64,000 nt of DNA, taken from positions 124,001 to 188,000 of the IMG/VR virus record IMGVR_UViG_3300046542_000248. One strand, written 5' to 3'. A program made the translations under genes and the position numbers. The notes under the pieces are model-generated. The model worked only from the letters and a program-made list of their open reading frames with translations, was not told where the DNA came from and did not search any database. Of this stretch, positions 18,858 through 61,306 are shown piece by piece; within the stretch, counting starts at the first letter, position 1; every line of letters begins with the position of its first letter.

Positions 18858-20936
18858 ATGCTTCAACCAGATCAAATTGAAGAACTTGACCGTATTGCTA
18901 GTGACATTAAAAATATTGACCATGCTTTAGGGAGTGGATTACTTATTCCACTTGGAAATAAAGTAAACTCTTCACGGGCTGCATTAGTATTTCAACAAAC
19001 AGGTCAGTCTAAAAATCTTGTTGAACCTGAGATTGCAAGAGTATCTACTGGATATGAGAAAGTATTCGGAGATAGATCAACTTCTTTCCATAAGACTGAG
19101 AAAGAATTTGAAGTCGTTAACAAGATTCAAAAGTTTGGTAATGACTTTGTATATGCCTTAGTCCTTAGAGAAAAAGGTACAAATTATTATGATCTTGTAC
19201 TTAGAAACGAAGTAGAATCCTTTGCTGAATCTTCCGGCGTAAAGATCAATAACACGGTTATTGACTCTATGAATATCGGAGATAAGATTAGAGAAGGTGA
19301 GATTCTACACAAATCTAATTCCTATGATGAGAATATGAATTATCGTCTAGGAATTAATGCTAAGACAATTTATATGACTGATCCTGCAATTGTAGAAGAT
19401 GGGTTTAGAACGTCTGTCCCTCTTGCATATCGTCTACGTTCCACTGATGTTATACCGTATAAAGTTCCTAAGAATACAAATGATATCTTCTTGAATCTAT
19501 ATGGGAATAGTGAAGTATACAAAACGTTCCCAGATATTGGTGAGAAGGTAAAGAATAAGGTTCTATGTGGAAAGCGCAGAATTGATTATAATAATGCACA
19601 GTATATGCTTAAGAGTAAGAATCTCCGTAAAGAGATGTTTGGTGATACTCTTACGTATACTGATGGTACTGTAGTTGATATTGATATCTACTCTAATGTA
19701 CCTATTGATGATGTTCCTACCGATCGGGTAAACGAACAGACTCTTAAGTACATGAAAATGATTAGCAAATATTGGCATGAACTAAGAAAAGTTCTTGGTC
19801 GTATTGTCGATAATCCTGAGAATGAATATTCAGACCAAGTTGGTATTACTTATGCTCGGGCTAAAGATGTCTTGAGTATTGGTAAGACTACTAAGTGGGA
19901 TGATGATGGTTCTATCTTTGATAATATGATCATGTATTTTACAGTGGTCAATACTAAGAAAGCTGTTATCGGTACGAAACTTGTAGGACGCCATGGTAAT
20001 AAAGGCGTAATCTCCGAAATTGTTGAAGAGAAGTATATGCCACGAAGTGAAGATGGTGAATATGCTGAAATCATCTTTAGTGCTCTTTCAGTTATTGGTC
20101 GTCTGAATCCTTCACAGCTATATGAGCTTGAGCTTAACTGGATTGTGGATGAGATTCTTAATGGTAATGTCTCGCAGAAGAAGAAGTTCGATACACTGCT
20201 TGACTTCCTATCCATCTGTAACCCAAATCAAGAAAAAGTAGTGCGTGAACTATATGATTCTCTTGATAAAGCTGAAAAAGAAGTATTTATGAGTCAACTT
20301 ACAACTGAGTTCGTTACATTCCAACCGCCTAGTATGTCGATTAGCTTTGACAACTATGCTAAACTGGTTGAGAAGGTTGAACCTAAGAAGAAACGCTTTA
20401 CAGTTATGGATGAAAAAGGACAAGTCTTTAACATCCAAAACAAACTGATTATGTCTGATTCATATATCTACAAACTGAAACATGAACCGATTACAAAGTT
20501 CTCTGTACGTTCTAAAGGTACTATTAATCCACGTACATTCCTTCCGATTAAATCGCATGCATATAGCAGAGGAACAGCTCTGTTTAATAACCAAGCGATT
20601 CGGATTGGTAATATGGAAATGGATATCCTCAATCTGTGTAACGATCCTGCGGCTATTAACTACTTTACACGATTGTATTGTACATCCGTAATTGGTCGTC
20701 GTGAATTTGCACAGCTACTTGATACAAACATCTTCCAAGATGAAATGGAAATCGAGATGAACAACTCAACTTCTCGTGTAGTAGATCTATTCAACTCTAC
20801 TTTCATGGTATGTGGTATGGGACTACGTTTCGAATATCCAGATAAGAAAGTAAATGACATCTTCCTTGAAGAGATTAAGAACATGGAAAGCAAACATGTA
20901 AAAGTTGTCTTTGCCGGATGGGATAAGTTTAAATAA
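18858..20936 (+). CDS. RNA polymerase beta C-terminal half, probable non-virion RNAP subunit
   Basis: NSSRA, EDG, GTKLVGRHGNKGVIS, MP, GRLNPSQLYE, YIYKLKH, RIGNME. Confidence 0.93.
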   Translation: MLQPDQIEELDRIASDIKNIDHALGSGLLIPLGNKVNSSRAALVFQQTGQSKNLVEPEIARVSTGYEKVFGDRSTSFHKTEKEFEVVNKIQKFGNDFVYALVLREKGTNYYDLVLRNEVESFAESSGVKINNTVIDSMNIGDKIREGEILHKSNSYDENMNYRLGINAKTIYMTDPAIVEDGFRTSVPLAYRLRSTDVIPYKVPKNTNDIFLNLYGNSEVYKTFPDIGEKVKNKVLCGKRRIDYNNAQYMLKSKNLRKEMFGDTLTYTDGTVVDIDIYSNVPIDDVPTDRVNEQTLKYMKMISKYWHELRKVLGRIVDNPENEYSDQVGITYARAKDVLSIGKTTKWDDDGSIFDNMIMYFTVVNTKKAVIGTKLVGRHGNKGVISEIVEEKYMPRSEDGEYAEIIFSALSVIGRLNPSQLYELELNWIVDEILNGNVSQKKKFDTLLDFLSICNPNQEKVVRELYDSLDKAEKEVFMSQLTTEFVTFQPPSMSISFDNYAKLVEKVEPKKKRFTVMDEKGQVFNIQNKLIMSDSYIYKLKHEPITKFSVRSKGTINPRTFLPIKSHAYSRGTALFNNQAIRIGNMEMDILNLCNDPAAINYFTRLYCTSVIGRREFAQLLDTNIFQDEMEIEMNNSTSRVVDLFNSTFMVCGMGLRFEYPDKKVNDIFLEEIKNMESKHVKVVFAGWDKFK

Positions 20937-26132: not shown

Positions 26133-28004
26133 ATGAATTATCTAAGCCAGATGGTCGCTAAAATGTCTGACACCATGGTTGATGGTATTAATGAAGATCT
26201 GTTTGACCGCCGGAAAGGGAAACAAATCTGGGAATTTATCGCTGAAGATTTAAGATCAGTAGAAATGTTACCTGATATATTCCTGAAGAATGTTCAATAT
26301 ATAAAGGACCCGTCTAAACTTGATGTTCGTTTGAACCTGAAGAATATTAAGAATAAGAAGATTCTCAAGAATAAAATTGAGAAGCTTATTCCAGTACAGC
26401 CTGATGTATTCGATGCTATTCGATTTACTGTGGATATTGCCGGTGGTCAGAAAGTAGAGAATACTATTCTGCTTCCGAAATATATAGATAGATACAACTT
26501 CATGATCTCTGGGAATAAAACTTTAGCTATGTTCCAGGTTGTAGATAACGCAACTTACAACCGCAAAGGTGAAGTAATCCTTAAATCCAGAATCCAGAAA
26601 CGTCTTAGCAGAGAAGAGAAGAAAAAGAAATATGAGCTTCTCTGTGTTGAGACAGGCAACCTTTACAAGATCAGTAATTTAAATATCAATCTATTCAAGA
26701 AGACTTTCAATCCGTTATACTACTTTGCGGCTAGAAGATCTATTCTTGGAACGATTGATTTCTTTGGATATACAAAGTTTCTTAATCTAGTTACAGAAGT
26801 TAAGCAGCCTGAATTGTTCTATTACTTCCGTATCAATTCTAACATTCTTTTCGAGTGTGAAAAGACGTTGTTTGATGATGACGGATTCTTTAGAACTTTC
26901 ACAGGATTACTTGCTCAGCTATTCAATACTCGTAACAAGATTGAAGATATTTATGAAGAAGAACTTTGGGTCAAGAAACTTGGCACGCTATTCACATCAG
27001 CGGCTAAGAATCAATTGAACAAAGGTTACGATGTTATGAAGTCATTCCGAAACGTTCTGGACACCACAACTCAGAATGCTTTACGGATTGATTACAAAGA
27101 CAAAGCTGATATCTACTGTGTATTACGGTGGATGATGCGAGAGTTCAATGAGTTGAGAAATATGGATAACAACTCCTTGGCTAATAAACGTATTCGTACT
27201 AATGAATATATTGCTGCATACTTTGCACGGTATTGGAAAGATAAAGTTAACTACGCTTTGAATCTGAAGCCGTATGATAAAGACAAGCTTGCACGGATCT
27301 TCAAGGTTGATGAGCACATTCTTATCAAAGCCTTGTTCCGTGGTAAGAAGCCATCTCCACTATTCCGTTACAATATTGATATCAATGATCTTCAAGCATT
27401 GAACGGATTGAAATTCTCACTCACAGGTATTCAAGGTCTGCCATCCGATAAAGTTAAGGATGAACAACGGGATATCTATCCGAGTCATCTTGGACGGTTC
27501 GAGCTTAATGCTATCTCGTCCAGTTCACCAGGTATCTCCGGTATGCTTACTCCATTCTGTAAGATTTATGATGGAGGATACTTCGGAGATTCTCAAGCAA
27601 TCGAGAAGCCTTATATCAAGAAGCTTCGTAAGAGAATCAAAGAGATTAAAACTAATGAGGGTGTATATAATGTGATTAGAGCGCATTATAAAACTCTTGA
27701 GGAAGATCATGAGAAGAGAAGATTCAATCTCAAGTATCGTGAACTTCGAAATGAACGTGGCTTTATCCAGATCGTAAGACCTAGATATATTCGTAATGAG
27801 CGAGGATATATTCGAGTTGATAAGGTGATTAATCCTGCGAGTTACAAACGTACTCCTAAAGGATATATCAAAGTCAACAGAAACTTTGTTCTATTGCGAC
27901 TTACTGCTAGTGTTAAACCTGAATTTAAACAAGGTTCGTATGTTAGAACTCCTGATGGCTATATTGGAATTACAATTAATCCAAACGGTCTATTTAAGAA
28001 ATAA
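26133..28004 (+). CDS. RNA polymerase beta N-terminal half, probable non-virion RNAP subunit, with C-terminal repeats
   Basis: LPK...FMISGN, LANKRIR, fork/Rif region RDIYPSHLGRF....SSSSPGISGMLTPF. Confidence 0.85.
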   Translation: MNYLSQMVAKMSDTMVDGINEDLFDRRKGKQIWEFIAEDLRSVEMLPDIFLKNVQYIKDPSKLDVRLNLKNIKNKKILKNKIEKLIPVQPDVFDAIRFTVDIAGGQKVENTILLPKYIDRYNFMISGNKTLAMFQVVDNATYNRKGEVILKSRIQKRLSREEKKKKYELLCVETGNLYKISNLNINLFKKTFNPLYYFAARRSILGTIDFFGYTKFLNLVTEVKQPELFYYFRINSNILFECEKTLFDDDGFFRTFTGLLAQLFNTRNKIEDIYEEELWVKKLGTLFTSAAKNQLNKGYDVMKSFRNVLDTTTQNALRIDYKDKADIYCVLRWMMREFNELRNMDNNSLANKRIRTNEYIAAYFARYWKDKVNYALNLKPYDKDKLARIFKVDEHILIKALFRGKKPSPLFRYNIDINDLQALNGLKFSLTGIQGLPSDKVKDEQRDIYPSHLGRFELNAISSSSPGISGMLTPFCKIYDGGYFGDSQAIEKPYIKKLRKRIKEIKTNEGVYNVIRAHYKTLEEDHEKRRFNLKYRELRNERGFIQIVRPRYIRNERGYIRVDKVINPASYKRTPKGYIKVNRNFVLLRLTASVKPEFKQGSYVRTPDGYIGITINPNGLFKK

Positions 28005-53867: not shown

Positions 53868-55073
53868 GTGAGTTATTTGCAAACTATCGTACTTGGCTCA
53901 ACACAAACTGGTCACAATATGCCTATTAATGAGGCACTGAAATTATCGTCATATGCAGCGGGAGTCTGCTATATGAAAGAGGACATTGAAGCTATTCTTA
54001 ATGAGGATATTGAAAGAACTCAAAGAAGAATAGATCAAACTCTTGGTAGCGGTCATCATTCTGTATATCAACACGTTCATTATACATTGGTATTCAAAGA
54101 TATCCCTAAAATTATTGCAATGCTTATTAACAATGAAAAACCTTATACTACTTCCGAGAAGTCTGCACGTTATACCAAAATGACGAATCTTCCGGTTGAA
54201 GAAAAAGAGCGTTATGATAACTGGTTAGGTCGATTCAAAGAAATGATCAGAGCCGAATATCCGCTGCTACTAGATACACATATCACTAAACTTGCGATGG
54301 AAAATTCTCGTTATATGATTAGCGTATTCACACCAACTACAATGGTGTATACGACTAACCTATCGCAATTGAATTACCTAATTGAAATGATGCTTAAATT
54401 TGTCCGTGAAAGTCAGGAGAAGTATGCTGATAACGGATTTGTAACAAAACTGAACAAACAGATTCTGCTGTTTGTAGAATGTCTGAAGCCATTCGAAGTT
54501 GAAGGTATGAATCGCAAGAATAAAGGTATCAGTCTTTCAATGTTCCAATTGGAAGAACCTGTTGCGATGGAGTACTACTTCGGAAATACGTATGAAACTA
54601 ATTACTGGGCAACATGGGCGCAATTTGCACAGGCTCAGCGTCATAGAACTCTCCATTACAATGTCTTTATTCCTCAATACGATGGAATGGGTCCTGGAGA
54701 TTTCCTCTATGTTCCGCCAATCATTACAAGCGATGAAATGAAACAGGATTGGATTGGGGATATGGTATCTCTTCCAAAAGATACATTCCCACAAGCCGGT
54801 AAGATTCTTGTTCAAGAACGTGGCTTATATGAGCACTTCATTCTTAAATGTCACGAAAGACTTTGCTGTCAGGCTCAAAACGAGATCATGCAGCAAACTA
54901 AAGATACGTTTGCTATGTATCTCGAAATGGCATCATCAACTCATCAAATTCATACGGACTTCCCTAATATTGATTATACTTCGTTTAAATCTAAAACGCA
55001 GTTGAAAAATATCTGGTGTGCAGGTTCTTGTAACAATTTCGGTCGCAGATATGCGTTAAATCGTAAAGCTTAA
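53868..55073 (+). CDS. thyX: FAD-dependent thymidylate synthase, two-domain ThyX/Thy1 type
   Basis: GHHSVYQH, SEKSARY, ENSRY, QAQRHRT, RLC..AQ.EI. Confidence 0.82.
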   Translation: MSYLQTIVLGSTQTGHNMPINEALKLSSYAAGVCYMKEDIEAILNEDIERTQRRIDQTLGSGHHSVYQHVHYTLVFKDIPKIIAMLINNEKPYTTSEKSARYTKMTNLPVEEKERYDNWLGRFKEMIRAEYPLLLDTHITKLAMENSRYMISVFTPTTMVYTTNLSQLNYLIEMMLKFVRESQEKYADNGFVTKLNKQILLFVECLKPFEVEGMNRKNKGISLSMFQLEEPVAMEYYFGNTYETNYWATWAQFAQAQRHRTLHYNVFIPQYDGMGPGDFLYVPPIITSDEMKQDWIGDMVSLPKDTFPQAGKILVQERGLYEHFILKCHERLCCQAQNEIMQQTKDTFAMYLEMASSTHQIHTDFPNIDYTSFKSKTQLKNIWCAGSCNNFGRRYALNRKA

Positions 55074-55378: not shown

Positions 55379-56974
55379 ATGAATAACGACATCATTGCCA
55401 ACTTCTCGCATTATGTAATTCCTAATTACAAAGAAGAAGGCACAGAAGATCAACTGACCTACTTAGAGAAGGCTTTGAGTACGTTTGATAAAAGAATCTA
55501 TCGTTATATCCCTATTGGGTATCATTACAATATGGAAACTAATGAGCTACGGATTCCAAGAGGATATCCATATCAAGATATTCTCAACTCTTTCAGATTC
55601 AAAAGAAAGATGACTGTTAATCAAAAACCGCAAGAATATGATAAGATTAAGTTAAGACTCTTTCAGAATCCTAGAGAACAGTTGCAAGTAGAAATGATGT
55701 CTTTCCTATGTGGATTAGGCAAACATGCTTACACTGCAAAATTCTCTCAGGTATTTTGTGATCTGAATACAGGTAAGGGTAAAACCTACTGTACGGTTGC
55801 ATCACTATCTTATTTCCAAGATAAAATCGTCATATTCATTCCATCTAAGCTAAGTAAGCTTATAGATCAATGGTATGACGCATTTACGGACTATACTGAT
55901 AAAAAACCTAGAGACATTCTGATTGTCCGTGGTTCTGATATGTGTGAAGATATTCATAAAGGTAAGTACGCTGATAAAGAAGTGTTTATCATTACAAAGG
56001 GAACTGCACTATCATATGCTAACACATATGGTTGGACTAAGTTCCAAGAGATGATTGCACAGACTAAAGCTGGAGTTAAGATTATTGATGAAGCTCATAT
56101 GGATATGAGATCCAATGTCTTAATTGACTGCTATTCCAATGTTAAGAAGAATATTTACCTCACAGCGTCTGCTCTTAGAGGTAATAGATTCGAGAATGAA
56201 ATCTTCAAAAAGATCTTCAGCGGTGTGCCTATATTCGGTAAAGAATTAGTCAAAGCTGAAGAGAATTATATCATTATGCTTATGTATTTCTTTAAGCATA
56301 TGCCTAATGTTAAACAAAGAGCTTCCTGTAAGATAAGAACCAATGATGGCTATGGTCTATCGGCAGTGAAGTATTCTAATTATCTTGTATCTAAAGAAGG
56401 TGCAAGACAAGAATTCTTTACAGCTATGAATAAAGCTATTAGAGATATCTTTGTGAAATACAGAAATAACTCTGGCTTTGTTAGCTTACCTAATATTGGA
56501 CCTGGTAAATATATCAGAAACTCCAATGGCAATATTCAAATCAATAGAACTGAAAAGTTCCAAGGGAAACTTCTTATCCTTGGAGCAACGATTGAATTCC
56601 TCAAAACTATACGAAAGTTCTTAGAAGTAAACTTTCCTGAATATAGCATAGGGTTATACTCTGGCGAAATTAAGGATATGAAGATAAGAGAACTTGAGTT
56701 GGAGAAAGATATTATCCTTGCCACTGAAAAAGGTATTGGGACTGGAGCAAACATTGAAGATCTTCAGTTTATGATCAATACCATTCCTTATAGCAATCCA
56801 GTGTATGCGAATCAACTACCTGGTCGTTTAAGAGAACTTAAAGGAAGAAAAGTTTACTATATGGAATTAATCAATACAGAATTTAGTGAAGCTGCTAAAC
56901 AATATGAAAGACGATCCAAATTCCTAATGGAAAAAGCTAAAAGTAATAAACTAATAACCGTGTCTGTCACCTAA
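55379..56974 (+). CDS. SF2 DExH helicase (UvsW-like)
   Basis: TGKGKT, IDEAH, LTAS, GTGANI, QLPGRLR. Confidence 0.88.
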   Translation: MNNDIIANFSHYVIPNYKEEGTEDQLTYLEKALSTFDKRIYRYIPIGYHYNMETNELRIPRGYPYQDILNSFRFKRKMTVNQKPQEYDKIKLRLFQNPREQLQVEMMSFLCGLGKHAYTAKFSQVFCDLNTGKGKTYCTVASLSYFQDKIVIFIPSKLSKLIDQWYDAFTDYTDKKPRDILIVRGSDMCEDIHKGKYADKEVFIITKGTALSYANTYGWTKFQEMIAQTKAGVKIIDEAHMDMRSNVLIDCYSNVKKNIYLTASALRGNRFENEIFKKIFSGVPIFGKELVKAEENYIIMLMYFFKHMPNVKQRASCKIRTNDGYGLSAVKYSNYLVSKEGARQEFFTAMNKAIRDIFVKYRNNSGFVSLPNIGPGKYIRNSNGNIQINRTEKFQGKLLILGATIEFLKTIRKFLEVNFPEYSIGLYSGEIKDMKIRELELEKDIILATEKGIGTGANIEDLQFMINTIPYSNPVYANQLPGRLRELKGRKVYYMELINTEFSEAAKQYERRSKFLMEKAKSNKLITVSVT

Positions 56975-59854: not shown

Positions 59855-61306
59855 ATGTCATATGGCATGGATTCTCACATGGAAGAAGCATTATTAAAAC
59901 TGGTAAACGAAAAACTGGATAAGAAAGATCAGCTCAAGATCAAGAAGTATCAAATGAGCGTACTATATGTATACGACCCAACCATTATCAAACAAATCTT
60001 GAAAGCCTGTAAATTCAAGGATGTTGGTAATATTTATGACTATCCGAAAGTATTCCCTAAGATGCGGATGGTTAACGGCTTCGATCTTACTGCCAATTTT
60101 GAATCATTCTTACGGATTGGCGTATCCAAGAAATTAAACACGGCGGTTATCTATAACTTCCAAGAGTATTCGTACTATTGTGTCTTCATGATTGACACTA
60201 AGATGCTCAAGAAGTTCGCCAAAGTCACTAAGCCGATCATTCAACAAGATTTATCTCAAATCAATATTTTCCAAGACGTTAGCTTCAAATGCAAACCTGG
60301 ACAATATCTTGAGGTATCTAAAGCGATCGGTAATCAAACAAAACCAGTTAATGCCGTTAAGAAAACTGTCTCTGATGAGAAGCTTGTCTTCGAAGAGAAG
60401 TCAGTTGTAAGTGAAGTTTTGGATGATATCACAAATTTCTTTACCGACGAAACCAAAGACTTCTATAAGAAAATGGATATTCCATTTAAACGTGGTTCTA
60501 TTCTTCATGGGCCGCCAGGAACAGGAAAATCTGCCGCTGTTCGTGAATTGATTCGTCGAATCGGTTCCGACGTTAGTAAAATCATTATCAGTCCAAACGT
60601 GGGATATGAGATTACGCATATCTTAGCATCAATGCTTCGTGCCTTGGACGGCAAGCCTGCAATTATCATTATTGAGGATATGGATTCTCTCATCAATGAA
60701 GAGAATCGCTCCGAGTTCCTCAATATCCTTGATGGTGTAGATGTTAAATCTGGTTCCTACATTATCGGTACTACAAACTACCCTGAACGTATTGACCCTG
60801 CATTCGTTAATCGGTCTGGTCGATTTGATCGTGCATTTAAGATCGACAATCCGACACATGCAACTAGAAAACTCTTCTTTGAGAGTAAGAATCTTAAAGA
60901 GGTTTTCAATACTGAAGAGGACATTGCTGAGATCTTCGCTAAGTTTACTGAAGGTCTTCCAATGGCTACATTGAAAGAAGTTATCACAACTGCAAAGTAC
61001 ACTCTTGCAGGTAATCCAAAACTGACTGTGACAGAAGCTGTCGAAGGTGCTACCAATAAGTTGAAATCCGACAAAGTGAAGCATATCGACGCTCACAAGC
61101 AGTTTAAGAATAAGAAGAAGAAAAATAAATTTGGATTCCAATCCAATGATGATGATGATGTGGAAGAGTTCGATACAGACAGCCTCGATGTTGTAACTGC
61201 GGCTACTGTTGAAGCGGTCAAAGTTGCTGGTAATGAAAAAGCAACTGGCTATATCAAGATCGTGAAGAAGGAAAACGCAGAAGTTGTCTTCGCTATGATT
61301 CCTTAG
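59855..61306 (+). CDS. AAA+ ATPase (classical clade, YjoB/BCS1-like)
   Basis: KRGSILHGPPGTGKS, IIIEDMD, TTNYPERIDPAF..RSGRFD. Confidence 0.88.
   Translation: MSYGMDSHMEEALLKLVNEKLDKKDQLKIKKYQMSVLYVYDPTIIKQILKACKFKDVGNIYDYPKVFPKMRMVNGFDLTANFESFLRIGVSKKLNTAVIYNFQEYSYYCVFMIDTKMLKKFAKVTKPIIQQDLSQINIFQDVSFKCKPGQYLEVSKAIGNQTKPVNAVKKTVSDEKLVFEEKSVVSEVLDDITNFFTDETKDFYKKMDIPFKRGSILHGPPGTGKSAAVRELIRRIGSDVSKIIISPNVGYEITHILASMLRALDGKPAIIIIEDMDSLINEENRSEFLNILDGVDVKSGSYIIGTTNYPERIDPAFVNRSGRFDRAFKIDNPTHATRKLFFESKNLKEVFNTEEDIAEIFAKFTEGLPMATLKEVITTAKYTLAGNPKLTVTEAVEGATNKLKSDKVKHIDAHKQFKNKKKKNKFGFQSNDDDDVEEFDTDSLDVVTAATVEAVKVAGNEKATGYIKIVKKENAEVVFAMIP

What the first reader, a model, noticed from the sequence alone, without database searches (positions are those of the whole stretch)
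56455..56550. The same hairpin motif is inserted twice in the SF2 helicase, a candidate shared docking or localisation tag
Seen in sequence: an insertion at the start of the helicase second RecA domain reads KYRNNSGFVSL...GKYIRNSNGNIQI. It matches the RNAP tail repeats (RYIRNERGYIRV, SYKRTPKGYIKV, SYVRTPDGYIGI) about 29 kb away in an unrelated enzyme. Inference: a phage-specific motif, Y-x-R-x-x-x-G-[FYN]-[IV], may recruit transcription and recombination enzymes to a common scaffold, compartment or nucleic acid, possibly the ncRNA. I know of no description of such a system.
Basis: partly seen in the sequence, partly recalled or inferred. Interest (0 to 1): 0.75.

Follow-up and report, generated by a model that had tools for sequence, protein, structure and literature searches.

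The report
Shared hairpin tag on phage enzymes
A 12-15 residue beta-hairpin motif (Y-V-R-N-x-x-G-Y/F-I-x-V) is attached to the ends or loops of at least six different proteins of this uncultivated jumbo phage, among them its own RNA polymerase and two helicases; it is conserved in related phages and most likely ties these enzymes to one common partner.

Summary
The helicase (window 55379-56974, XPB-like SF2) has a 34-residue insertion just before its second RecA domain. 34 of 43 homologues lack it. The second copy (aa 377-390) is a hairpin with six residues invariant in all 9 insertion-bearing homologues. The "first copy" is mostly the end of a core helix and scores at chance.

An HMM trained only on the RNA-polymerase tail repeats also finds the motif in the helicase, at the C-terminus of the DnaB-like replicative helicase, and at the C-terminus of an HNH-like protein. 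All three score above every one of 100 shuffles. Weaker copies, conserved in orthologues, lie in a K/E-rich protein and a small basic protein. Four relatives show the same pattern. Two relatives whose polymerase lacks the tail have none. A distant relative carries a variant (R-D-x-D-G-F-x-x-L) in both its polymerase tail and its other carriers.

No Pfam family, no shared DNA and no published description was found. The best reading is a modular docking tag for a common partner, which remains unidentified. Direct nucleic-acid binding is the main rival. Nothing links it to an ncRNA.

The parts
55379..56974 (+). XPB/UvsW-like SF2 helicase, 531 aa
   Evidence: Pfam ResIII/DEAD and phrog_16. AlphaFold model pLDDT 89. 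The best structural matches are XPB/Ssl2 of TFIIH (8ebs_A, TMq 0.59), archaeal XPB and T4 UvsW. The nearest named phages are AR9/PBS1 at 28% identity.
56462..56563 (+). Clade-specific insertion (aa 362-395) between the last linker helix and the first strand of RecA2
   Evidence: Present in 9 of 43 aligned homologues and absent from the rest. Low pLDDT, 47-57.
56507..56548 (+). The conserved hairpin copy, KYIRNSNGNIQINR (aa 377-390)
   Evidence: 10.6 bits with the RNAP-only HMM, above all 100 shuffles. Y378, R380, N381, G384 and I386 (and G376 just before it) are invariant in 9/9 homologues. Predicted strands are 378-380 and 386-388.
56456..56488 (+).
   Evidence: 4.0 bits here, 11.9 in P0004, and negative or not reported in P0005, P0006, P0008 and P0009 (1.8 in P0007). 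KYR is conserved in homologues without the insertion. The helix ends at residue 364 in the model.
26133..28004 (+). N-terminal half of the beta subunit of the non-virion multisubunit RNA polymerase (AR9 gp105 type), 623 aa
   Evidence: PDB 7S00 chain c, E 1.5e-50, over aa 74-485. phrog_2943. Named phage homologues are annotated as non-virion RNAP beta and all end near aa 485-493 of this protein.
27609..27734 (+). Helical hairpin (aa 493-534) that links the polymerase core to the repeats
   Evidence: AlphaFold helices 493-507 and 509-534, pLDDT about 86-93. Absent from AR9-type homologues.
27735..27779 (+). RNAP tail hairpin copy 1 (aa 535-549, YRELRNERGFIQIVR)
   Evidence: HMM 18.8 bits. Conserved in 14 orthologues.
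27780..27824 (+). RNAP tail hairpin copy 2 (aa 550-564, PRYIRNERGYIRVDK)
   Evidence: HMM 20.6 bits. R, G and I are invariant in 14 orthologues.
27840..27881 (+). RNAP tail hairpin copy 3 (aa 570-583, ASYKRTPKGYIKVN)
   Evidence: HMM 15.3 bits. Predicted strands 571-573 and 579-581.
27933..27977 (+). RNAP tail hairpin copy 4 (aa 601-615, GSYVRTPDGYIGITI); only the six closest orthologues have this fourth copy
   Evidence: HMM 15.7 bits. Alignment A3. Predicted strands 603-605 and 611-613.
18858..20936 (+). C-terminal half of the same RNAP beta subunit; carries no motif and is used here to place the tail
   Evidence: PDB 7S00 chain C, E 1.4e-94. Pfam RNA_pol_Rpb2_6. It starts at the 'LIP..' motif that follows the external-1 domain in E. 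coli RpoB.
61244..61267 (+). Possible degenerate half-motif (ATGYIKIV) near the C-terminus of an AAA+ clamp-loader-like ATPase (ORF 59855-61306)
   Evidence: 4.9 bits, which is within chance. 'GYIKIVKK' is kept in the G001 orthologue but not in more distant ones. Pfam AAA and phrog_168. Not counted as a carrier.

Best explanation
The helicase segment is one copy of a modular, flexibly tethered beta-hairpin peptide. Its core is Y-[VI]-R-[NST]-x-x-G-[YF]-I-x-[VIL], often followed by basic residues. A clade of uncultivated AR9-related jumbo phages has attached it to the termini or surface loops of several otherwise unrelated proteins.

Carriers:
- three or four tandem copies at the C-terminus of the non-virion RNA polymerase beta-N subunit;
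- one copy (sometimes two) at the C-terminal tail of the DnaB-like replicative helicase;
- one in a loop of the XPB-like helicase, a recent gain;
- one at the C-terminus of an HNH-like protein;
- one at the N-terminus of a K/E-rich protein encoded next to the DNA polymerase;
- one near the C-terminus of a small basic protein.

Shown: the motif is non-random. It is under purifying selection relative to its flanks. It has been gained independently in different proteins. It is maintained at the protein level, not the DNA level. Its sequence flavour changes in concert among carriers between distant genomes.

Inferred: the hairpin is a docking tag, like a short linear motif but folded as a hairpin. 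Its hydrophobic face (V/I/I/V) and conserved turn would be recognised by one common partner. This would gather the transcription and replication machinery on a shared hub. The multicopy RNAP tail would provide avidity. The partner is not identified.
For: 1. Enrichment. An HMM trained only on RNAP tails finds three non-RNAP carriers in the genome at 20.9, 15.6 and 10.6 bits. The maximum in 100 shuffles is 8.9. The regex gives 6 observed against 0.20 expected.

2. The same picture in relatives. G001, G002 and G003 each have 2-4 non-RNAP carrier ORFs above every shuffle. G004 and G005, whose beta-N lacks the tail, have none.

3. Conservation.
- All 15 DnaB-like homologues with >=50% identity keep the hairpin. 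Y, R, G and I are 15/15 identical. Mean column identity is 0.66 in the motif against 0.37 in the 20 columns upstream.
- In the helicase insert, identity is 0.69 in the hairpin against 0.50 in the rest of the insert.
- The N-terminal copy of the K/E-rich protein is kept in six genomes.

4. Modularity. Copies are C-terminal, N-terminal or in a loop. They sit in low-pLDDT, exposed regions. The helicase copy is a late gain, in a lineage that already had the motif in the RNAP and DnaB.

5. No nucleotide similarity exists between copies, and their codons differ.

6. Concerted change.
- In distant G006, the RNAP tail uses R-D-x-D-G-F-x-x-L.
- So do the orthologous K/E-rich protein (RDEDGFVLL), the DnaB tail (TDSDGFYVL) and several other termini. 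Four non-RNAP ORFs score above all 60 shuffles.
- An acidic hairpin tip argues against contact with a nucleic-acid backbone.

7. In hairpin-less sister clades, the DnaB tail ends instead in an acidic/aromatic peptide (DFEPFDF, DLFDF). From established knowledge of T7 gp4 and SSB tails, this is the look of a protein-docking tail.

8. No Pfam family matches the tail.
Against: - No partner is identified and no interaction was tested. AlphaFold-multimer was not available.
- Every well-annotated carrier works on nucleic acid. The motif has an invariant Arg, aromatic residues and frequent basic flanks, so direct DNA/RNA binding fits many of the same facts.
- The concerted N-to-D shift rests on essentially one deep split, G000-G003 against G006/G008. 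Turnover of carriers copied from an intragenomic template could partly explain it.
- The variant HMM for G006 was built from only 12 units.
- The hairpins have low AlphaFold confidence, so even the hairpin fold is a prediction.
- No sliding-clamp family was detected in the genome.
- The phylogenetic-profile candidates for a partner are weak leads: a 185-aa protein and a 281-aa protein with possible Whirly/PurA-like features.
Confidence: 0.5

Rival explanations
1. The hairpin is a minimal accessory nucleic-acid-binding arm, comparable in role to AT-hooks or the beta-arms of HU/IHF. Each enzyme uses it to hold on to phage DNA or RNA. The RNAP has several copies for avidity, replacing DNA contacts that cellular RNAPs make through alpha-CTD and sigma.
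For: - Annotated carriers are DNA/RNA enzymes or basic proteins: RNAP, DnaB-like, XPB-like, HNH-like, and a small protein with a K-rich tail.
- The motif has an invariant Arg and conserved aromatic residues. Basic residues often follow the second strand (LTRKVR, LVRRR, LKRRK).
- Copies are tandem and flexibly tethered.
- AR9-type RNAPs lack alpha and omega subunits (PMC9209446).
Against: - Turn residues are often acidic. In the distant clade they are strongly acidic (RDEDGF, RDDDGF, KDDEGF, TDSDGF).
- Three orthologous carriers change in the same way, which a generic nucleic-acid ligand does not predict.
- In sister clades the equivalent DnaB tail carries an acidic DFEPFDF peptide that cannot bind DNA.
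- The motif does not match any known nucleic-acid-binding Pfam family.
Confidence: 0.28
2. The hairpin is an address signal. It would send proteins to a phage-built compartment or replication factory, or into the capsid for injection, through a dedicated receptor or transporter.
For: - The set of carriers (nvRNAP, replicative helicase, XPB-like helicase, nuclease-like protein) resembles the cargo that nucleus-forming phages import.
- The motif is terminal or exposed, and portable.
- Clade-specific covariation exists.
Against: - phmmer with phiKZ gp54 (chimallin) and gp69 (PicA) finds nothing in seven related genomes, while the phiKZ DNA polymerase control is found in six of them (E 1e-9 to 1e-14).
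- In chimalliviruses, cargo is recognised through surface patches, not a terminal signal (PMC12908238).
- A non-virion RNAP and a replicative helicase are unlikely capsid cargo.
- Three or four copies on one protein is unusual for a sorting signal.
Confidence: 0.1
3. The copies have no shared function. The RNAP tail would be a diverged remnant of the external-1 domain of cellular beta subunits, which lies at the same place in the chain and is also made of hairpins. The other copies would be convergent, structurally favoured N-x-x-G hairpins.
For: - The tail lies exactly between the 'PG..G.L' fork motif and the 'LIP..' motif. E. coli RpoB has the external-1 domain there (NEYGFLETPYRKVTDGVV...).
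- Language-model features of the tail are nearest to Rpb2_45 and Rpb2_4/5 clusters, at 0.85-0.89, which is a lead only.
- Phage fibre proteins use a similar N-D-x-G-[FY]-I turn in an unrelated repeat.
Against: - Pfam PF10385 hits none of the 14 tails, nor the genome.
- The motif HMMs do not hit the E. coli segment. The best score in RpoB is -3.5 bits, elsewhere in the protein, and is no better than shuffles.
- Convergence does not explain the enrichment against shuffles, the invariant positions in orthologues, the restriction to genomes whose RNAP has the tail, or the concerted variant in G006.
Confidence: 0.07

Closest known systems
Sliding-clamp-binding C-terminal peptides of phage T4 (gp43 polymerase, gp33 and gp55 transcription factors binding gp45); bacterial beta-clamp and PIP-box motifs
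   Same: A short peptide at protein ends is shared by replication and transcription proteins, so that they dock on one hub. It is portable between unrelated proteins. (Established knowledge; not tested here.)
   Different: The sequence is unrelated. It is a predicted hairpin rather than an extended hydrophobic peptide. It also occurs at N-termini and in a loop. It is present in three or four tandem copies on the RNAP. No clamp family (PF09116, PF00712, PF00705) was detected in the genome.
Acidic/aromatic C-terminal docking tails (T7 gp4 helicase and gp2.5 SSB; bacterial SSB C-terminal tip)
   Same: A flexible C-terminal tail on a replicative helicase carries a short recognition element. Sister clades of this phage have such a tail (DFEPFDF) at the position where this clade has the hairpin.
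   Different: The hairpin is not acidic/aromatic. It is shared with an RNA polymerase subunit and with non-replisome proteins.
AT-hook and similar accessory nucleic-acid-binding mini-motifs; beta-arms of HU/IHF
   Same: A short motif, single or tandem, sits at termini or linkers of diverse DNA-binding proteins and has a conserved Arg.
   Different: There is no GRP core and no Pro at the tip. The turn is frequently acidic. No binding data exist.
[quoted passage not shown]
   Same: Phage transcription and replication enzymes are selectively gathered.
   Different: Known cargo has no linear signal (PMC12908238). No chimallin or PicA homologue was found here. The nearest named relatives are AR9/PBS1-type phages.
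External-1 domain of cellular RNAP beta (Pfam RNA_pol_Rpb2_45)
   Same: Same position in the beta chain, and hairpin-rich.
   Different: No HMM match. AR9-type homologues lack any domain there.
AR9 / phiKZ-type split multisubunit non-virion RNA polymerase
   Same: The host protein of the repeats is a clear homologue of AR9 gp105 (beta-N), with beta-C encoded separately.
   Different: The AR9, PBS1 and Staphylococcus jumbo-phage proteins end about 130 residues earlier and have no repeats.

Membership tests
Canonical SF2 helicase element (e.g. conserved motif or strand-separating hairpin) | Present at the equivalent position in homologous helicases | tested here: not met
   Absent from 34 of 43 aligned homologues; a gap of about 30 columns.
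XPB/Rad25-UvsW group of SF2 helicases (for the host protein, not the motif) | Two RecA domains with SF2 motifs, and closest structural similarity to XPB | tested here: met
   Pfam ResIII/DEAD. Foldseek top hits are XPB/Ssl2 (TMq 0.54-0.59, E 1e-13), archaeal XPB and T4 UvsW. Sequence identity is only 11-16%, so the subfamily assignment is structural.
RNA_pol_Rpb2_45 (external-1 domain of RNAP beta) | Match to Pfam PF10385 at or above 28.2 bits | tested here: not met
   No hit in the genome or in the 14 tails at E<=10.
RNA_pol_Rpb2_45 (external-1 domain of RNAP beta) | Located between the fork motif (ETPEG..GL) and the LIPF..DANRALMG motif | tested here: met
   Beta-N ends after SSSPGISGMLTPF plus the tail. 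Beta-C starts at GLLIPLGNKVNSSRAAL. The order was checked against E. coli RpoB.
Clamp-binding peptide systems (T4 gp45 type, beta-clamp, PCNA) | A sliding clamp encoded by the phage | tested here: inconclusive
   PF09116, PF00712 and PF00705 give no match in the genome. Divergent clamps could be missed, and a host clamp was not examined.
Clamp-binding peptide systems (T4 gp45 type, beta-clamp, PCNA) | Consensus such as QL[SD]LF, QxxLxxFF or the T4 C-terminal hydrophobic peptide | tested here: not met
   The motif read directly from alignments is Y-V-R-N-x-x-G-Y-I-x-V. The clamp consensuses come from established knowledge.
Chimallivirus nuclear cargo | Genome encodes the chimallin shell protein and PicA | tested here: not met
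   phmmer with phiKZ gp54 and gp69 gives best E values of 2.9 and 0.048. The DNA polymerase control gives 8e-12. This is single-sequence sensitivity only.
Short docking motif / peptide tag (generic class) | Short, in flexible exposed regions, outside globular domains | tested here: met
   12-15 residues. pLDDT is 40-59 in both models. The position is terminal in five carriers.
Short docking motif / peptide tag (generic class) | Occurs in unrelated proteins by independent gain and is more conserved than its flanks | tested here: met
   Carriers have different folds and families. The gain in the SF2 helicase is dated to a subclade. Conservation is 0.66 against 0.37 and 0.69 against 0.50. There is no DNA similarity.
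Short docking motif / peptide tag (generic class) | A defined binding partner | not testable with these tools
   No complex prediction or binding assay was available. Profile candidates only.
AT-hook-like nucleic-acid-binding mini-motif | Demonstrated or predicted nucleic-acid contact; basic core | not testable with these tools
   The composition is mixed: an invariant Arg but acidic turns. No assay was possible.
Phage fibre 'S-x-L-x-N-D-x-G-[FY]-I-T' repeats | Six or more head-to-tail units of about 17-22 residues with that consensus in a fibre protein | tested here: not met
   These proteins are the only non-RNAP, non-artefact hits of the tail profile in 1.84 billion proteins (E 3e-5 to 7e-4). 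Their unit and context differ.

The most novel reading that the evidence does not exclude
The hairpin is the ligand of a so-far unknown phage-encoded hub or sorting receptor. That receptor would organise a transcription-replication factory in jumbo phages that do not build a chimallin nucleus. This would be the first portable peptide 'address' described in phage cell biology. Its code drifts between clades (R-N-x-x-G-Y-I against R-D-x-D-G-F-x-x-L), and clients are gained and lost by adding or dropping a 12-residue hairpin.
Probability: 0.2. Interest if true: 0.9.

Novelty: new variant of a known kind. Interest (0 to 1): 0.7.

Why it matters
How large phages bring their own RNA polymerase, helicases and nucleases together on their DNA is known in only a few cases: T4 clamp coupling, and import into the chimallivirus nucleus without a linear signal.

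Here, sequence statistics alone reveal a portable peptide module shared by the non-virion RNA polymerase, the replicative helicase, an XPB-like translocase and several small proteins across a whole clade of uncultivated jumbo phages.

If it is a docking tag:
- it gives a direct handle for finding the hub, using the peptide as bait;
- it could be used to tag foreign proteins to the phage machinery;
- it would help annotate clients among the many proteins of unknown function.

If instead it binds nucleic acid, it is a new minimal binding motif. Either way the question can be tested with a synthetic peptide.

Tried and rejected
1. Chance. Rejected by shuffles with the HMM and with the regex.

2. 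A normal SF2 element. Rejected by the alignment.

3. Two equal copies in the helicase. Rejected, because the first scores 4.0 bits and is not conserved.

4. Homology of the RNAP tail to the external-1 domain of cellular beta. This was my own lead, from the E. coli segment NEYGFLETPYRKVTDGVV.
- The position fits.
- PF10385 does not match.
- The motif HMMs do not hit E. coli RpoB there.
- The Atlas feature hits at 0.85-0.89 are leads only.

5. A mobile DNA element or recent duplication. There is no nucleotide similarity between copies.

6. A known Pfam repeat. None was found. The weak sub-threshold DUF1936 hits (4 of 14 tails, best E 0.0014, cut-off 25 bits) were ignored.

7. Phage-nucleus import. 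No chimallin or PicA was found.

8. A sliding clamp as partner. No clamp family was found.

9. Partner search by phylogenetic profile.
- Six ORFs are present in all motif-bearing genomes and absent from two motif-less ones.
- Two are host-range proteins (a tail fibre and an SLT transglycosylase), one is a 71-aa antisense ORF, and one is itself a carrier.
- That leaves a 185-aa and a 281-aa protein of unknown function.
- The 281-aa protein has weak Whirly/PurA-like leads (TM 0.37-0.43) and no homologue in cultured phages. This is not decisive.

10. A profile search of 1.84 billion proteins with the tail gave 11 hits: beta-N fragments, fibre proteins with a different repeat, and one low-complexity artefact.

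11. Link to an ncRNA. Rfam finds nothing in the window. This was not pursued further.
Full report
WHAT IS AT THE COORDINATES

The finding lies in ORF 55379-56974 (+), 531 aa. It is an SF2 helicase by Pfam (ResIII 1.7e-9, DEAD) and PHROG 16.

An AlphaFold model built on 43 homologues is confident (pLDDT 89, pTM 0.80). Its best structural matches are XPB/Ssl2 of TFIIH, archaeal XPB and T4 UvsW. The closest named phages are AR9/PBS1 (28% identity) and Staphylococcus jumbo phages.

The window is part of a 246,901-bp IMG/VR virus record (G000, positions 124001-188000).

- It is the N-terminal half of the beta subunit of the non-virion multisubunit RNA polymerase. It matches AR9 nvRNAP chain 7S00_c with E 1.5e-50 over aa 74-485.
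- Named homologues are annotated as non-virion RNAP beta and all stop near aa 485-493.
- The C-terminal half of beta is ORF 18858-20936 (7S00_C, 1.4e-94).

THE OBSERVATION

The helicase peptide is a true insertion. About 30 residues between the conserved 'KYR' and 'GKLLIL' exist only in the nine closest homologues (55-100% identity) and are absent from the other 34.

In the model the insertion follows helix 343-364 and precedes the first strand of RecA2 (397-402). It is the only low-confidence region. It contains a short hairpin, Y378-I379-R380 / I386-Q387-I388.

The two 'copies' behave differently.
- The second copy has G376, Y378, R380, N381, G384 and I386 invariant in 9/9 homologues. It scores 13.6-26.4 bits with an HMM trained only on RNAP tails.
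- The first copy re-uses the core 'KYR' at the helix end. It scores 4.0 bits in this protein and 11.9 in P0004, and is negative or unaligned in P0005, P0006, P0008 and P0009 (1.8 in P0007).

So there is one robust copy and, at best, one nascent or decayed copy.

The RNAP tail has four copies here, at aa 535-549, 550-564, 570-583 and 601-615. Fourteen orthologues have three or four copies. A confident helical hairpin (aa 493-534) precedes them. The repeats themselves have pLDDT 40-59.

IS IT MORE THAN CHANCE?

I built a 15-column HMM from 46 RNAP-tail units, with no helicase sequence in it. I scanned all six-frame ORFs of at least 60 aa in the whole genome (847 ORFs, 129,557 residues).

Besides the four RNAP copies (15.3-20.6 bits), the HMM found the following:
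- the C-terminus of a 125-aa HNH-like protein, GWDYVRNSRGYISVTLS, 20.9 bits (G000 76483-76860);
- the C-terminal tail of the DnaB-like replicative helicase, KYVRNERGLISVTI, 15.6 bits (G000 120366-122312, just upstream of the window);
- the helicase insert, 10.6 bits.

In 100 residue shuffles of the same ORF set the best score averaged 5.0 and never exceeded 8.9.

Family assignments of the new carriers come from Pfam (divDNAB and DnaB_C) and from PHROG HNH families.

RELATIVES

I fetched seven related IMG/VR records whole.

G001 (about 75% protein identity), G002 and G003 (about 50%) each show the RNAP copies plus 2-4 other carrier ORFs above every one of 60 shuffles. G004 and G005 (about 30% identity), whose beta-N lacks the tail, have no hit above shuffles.

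Orthology analysis defines these carrier families:
- RNAP beta-N;
- DnaB-like helicase, C-terminal copy;
- a 400-aa K/E-rich protein encoded next to the DNA polymerase, N-terminal copy. It is weak in G000 (6.1 bits) but reaches 10-12.5 bits in G001-G003;
- a small basic protein of about 85 aa, with a copy near the C-terminus followed by a K-rich tail;
- a coiled-coil protein, in G002 and G003 only;
- a 142-aa protein, with a C-terminal copy in G002 and degenerate copies elsewhere;
- the HNH-like protein, in G000;
- the XPB-like helicase, in the G000/G001 subclade only.

All 15 DnaB-like homologues with at least 50% identity keep the hairpin. Y, R, G and I are identical in 15/15. Mean column identity is 0.66 in the motif against 0.37 in the 20 residues upstream. 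One homologue has two copies.

By matching contig lengths, RNAP-tail and DnaB-tail hairpins co-occur on all eight contigs that could be paired. The SF2 insert is on four of them. The helicase therefore acquired the motif late, in a lineage where other proteins already had it.

A VARIANT IN A DISTANT CLADE

In G006 the beta-N is only about 28% identical to this one. Its tail repeats read R-D-x-D-G-F-x-x-L-x-R.

An HMM made from 12 such RNAP units finds the same variant in these G006 ORFs:
- the N-terminus of a 251-aa ORF (18.4 bits);
- the C-termini of a 126-aa and a 240-aa ORF;
- the N-terminus of the orthologue of the K/E-rich protein, RDEDGFVLL.

All four score above 60 shuffles. The variant is also visible in the DnaB tail (TDSDGFYVL) and in an HNH-like protein.

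Three orthologous carriers thus changed in the same direction: N to D after the Arg, loss of the first-strand Tyr, and Leu at the end.

WHAT IT IS NOT

- There is no nucleotide similarity between copies, and codons differ. It is neither a mobile DNA element nor a recent duplication.
- No Pfam family matches.
- The tail sits exactly where cellular beta subunits have the external-1 domain, between the fork motif and the LIPF motif. That domain starts with a superficially similar hairpin in E. coli (NEYGFLETPYRKVTDGVV). But PF10385 hits neither the genome nor 14 tails, and the motif HMMs do not hit that E. coli segment. Language-model similarity to Rpb2 clusters (0.85-0.89) is only a lead. I keep this as a positional analogy, not homology.
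- A profile of the tail searched against 1.84 billion representative proteins found only 11 hits at E<=0.001. These are beta-N fragments, a low-complexity artefact, and phage fibre proteins with a different 'S-x-L-x-N-D-x-G-[FY]-I-T' repeat. Tandem arrays of this motif are therefore essentially confined to these polymerases.
- No chimallin or PicA homologue was found, although the phiKZ polymerase control was. The review literature states that chimallivirus cargo has no terminal signal (PMC12908238).
- No clamp family was detected.
- Rfam finds nothing in the window.

HOW IT MOST LIKELY WORKS

Shown:
- a short hairpin-forming peptide, exposed and flexibly tethered;
- under purifying selection;
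- portable between termini and loops of unrelated proteins;
- restricted to genomes whose nvRNAP carries it in tandem;
- changing in concert among carriers.

Inferred: it is a docking tag read by a common partner, and the multicopy RNAP tail gives avidity.

Three points favour a protein partner over nucleic acid.
- The turn is often acidic, and strongly so in the distant clade.
- Three orthologous carriers show a parallel change.
- In hairpin-less sister clades, the same DnaB tail ends in an acidic/aromatic peptide (DFEPFDF, DLFDF). From established knowledge of T7 gp4 and SSB tails, this is the signature of a protein-docking tail.

Against this reading:
- no partner is known;
- all annotated carriers act on nucleic acid;
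- the invariant Arg, the aromatic residues and the basic flanks fit a nucleic-acid-binding arm.

I put docking at about 0.5, direct nucleic-acid binding at about 0.28, an address or packaging signal at about 0.1, and no common function at about 0.07.

Phylogenetic profiling for a partner gave only weak candidates: a 185-aa protein next to the small basic carrier, and a 281-aa protein with Whirly/PurA-like leads, a G/S/N-rich linker and an acidic C-terminus.

COMPARISON AND NOVELTY

In logic, the closest known systems are the clamp-binding peptides that couple T4 replication and late transcription, and the acidic docking tails of T7 gp4 and of SSB. In form, the closest are AT-hook-like mini-motifs. 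None shares the sequence, the hairpin form, the tandem array on an RNAP subunit, or the phyletic range.

I found no description of it in Pfam, in PHROG annotations or in the papers searched. I file it as a new variant of a known kind, a shared docking or tethering peptide, with function unproven.

LIMITS

- ORFs were taken stop-to-stop in six frames, so some short 'carriers' need gene calling.
- Shuffles keep composition per ORF only.
- The iterated HMM is partly circular. For that reason, counts are given from the RNAP-only HMM.
- The concerted-change argument rests on one deep split.
- All genomes are uncultivated, so nothing is known about expression or host.

Noticed in passing
G000 120366-122312 (just upstream of the window; locus L002 4366-6312) and homologues P0154-P0273: The tail of the DnaB-like helicase ends in 'FF.KK.EWQ[ED]F' after the hairpin. 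About 100 homologues in hairpin-less clades instead end in KRGKKN..ER...DFEPFDF or DLFDF, an acidic/aromatic peptide. The tail seems to be a docking tail whose peptide type was swapped between clades.
   Followed up: partly
RNAP beta-N homologues P0072-P0139 (tail-less clade): 53 of 68 end in G[FIY]D[ILM]FGDG followed by aromatic residues. This may be another C-terminal peptide motif on the same subunit in the sister clade. Its similarity to the DnaB 'DLFDF' tails was not tested.
   Followed up: no
window 61244-61267 (ORF 59855-61306, AAA+ clamp-loader-like ATPase): The C-terminal 'GYIKIVKK' looks like the second strand of the motif. It is kept in the G001 orthologue, but its score (4.9 bits) is within chance.
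   Followed up: partly
G000 202289-203134 (locus L181 1289-2134): A 281-aa protein with a G/S/N-rich linker and an acidic C-terminus. It has weak Whirly/PurA-like structural leads and so is a possible single-stranded-DNA-binding protein. It is present in all motif-bearing genomes examined and was not detected in two motif-less ones.
   Followed up: partly
G000 192995-193189 (locus L003 about 1025-1495; L005): A second RNAP beta-like piece (GRYGNKGV motif) matches Pfam RNA_pol_Rpb2_6 with an in-frame TGA inside the match. A 1396-aa ORF at G000 86810-90997 also matches weakly. These are presumably the virion RNAP set, possibly split or interrupted.
   Followed up: no
window 53868-55073: The ThyX-like ORF is 401 aa, but the Thy1 domain covers only aa 22-175. 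The long C-terminal part has no assigned family.
   Followed up: no
P0044 (916 aa) among the helicase homologues: A helicase homologue carrying a LAGLIDADG (PF14528) domain, probably an intein or homing-endonuclease insertion.
   Followed up: no
P0147, P0148, P0150, P0153 (metagenomic phage fibre-like proteins): Long arrays of 'P-T-K-x-S-x-L-x-N-D-x-G-[FY]-I-T' repeats with no Pfam family. They share the N-D-x-G-[FY]-I turn with the hairpin motif.
   Followed up: partly
   Followed up: yes
window 1-64000: No Rfam family reaches its gathering score anywhere in the window.
   Followed up: partly
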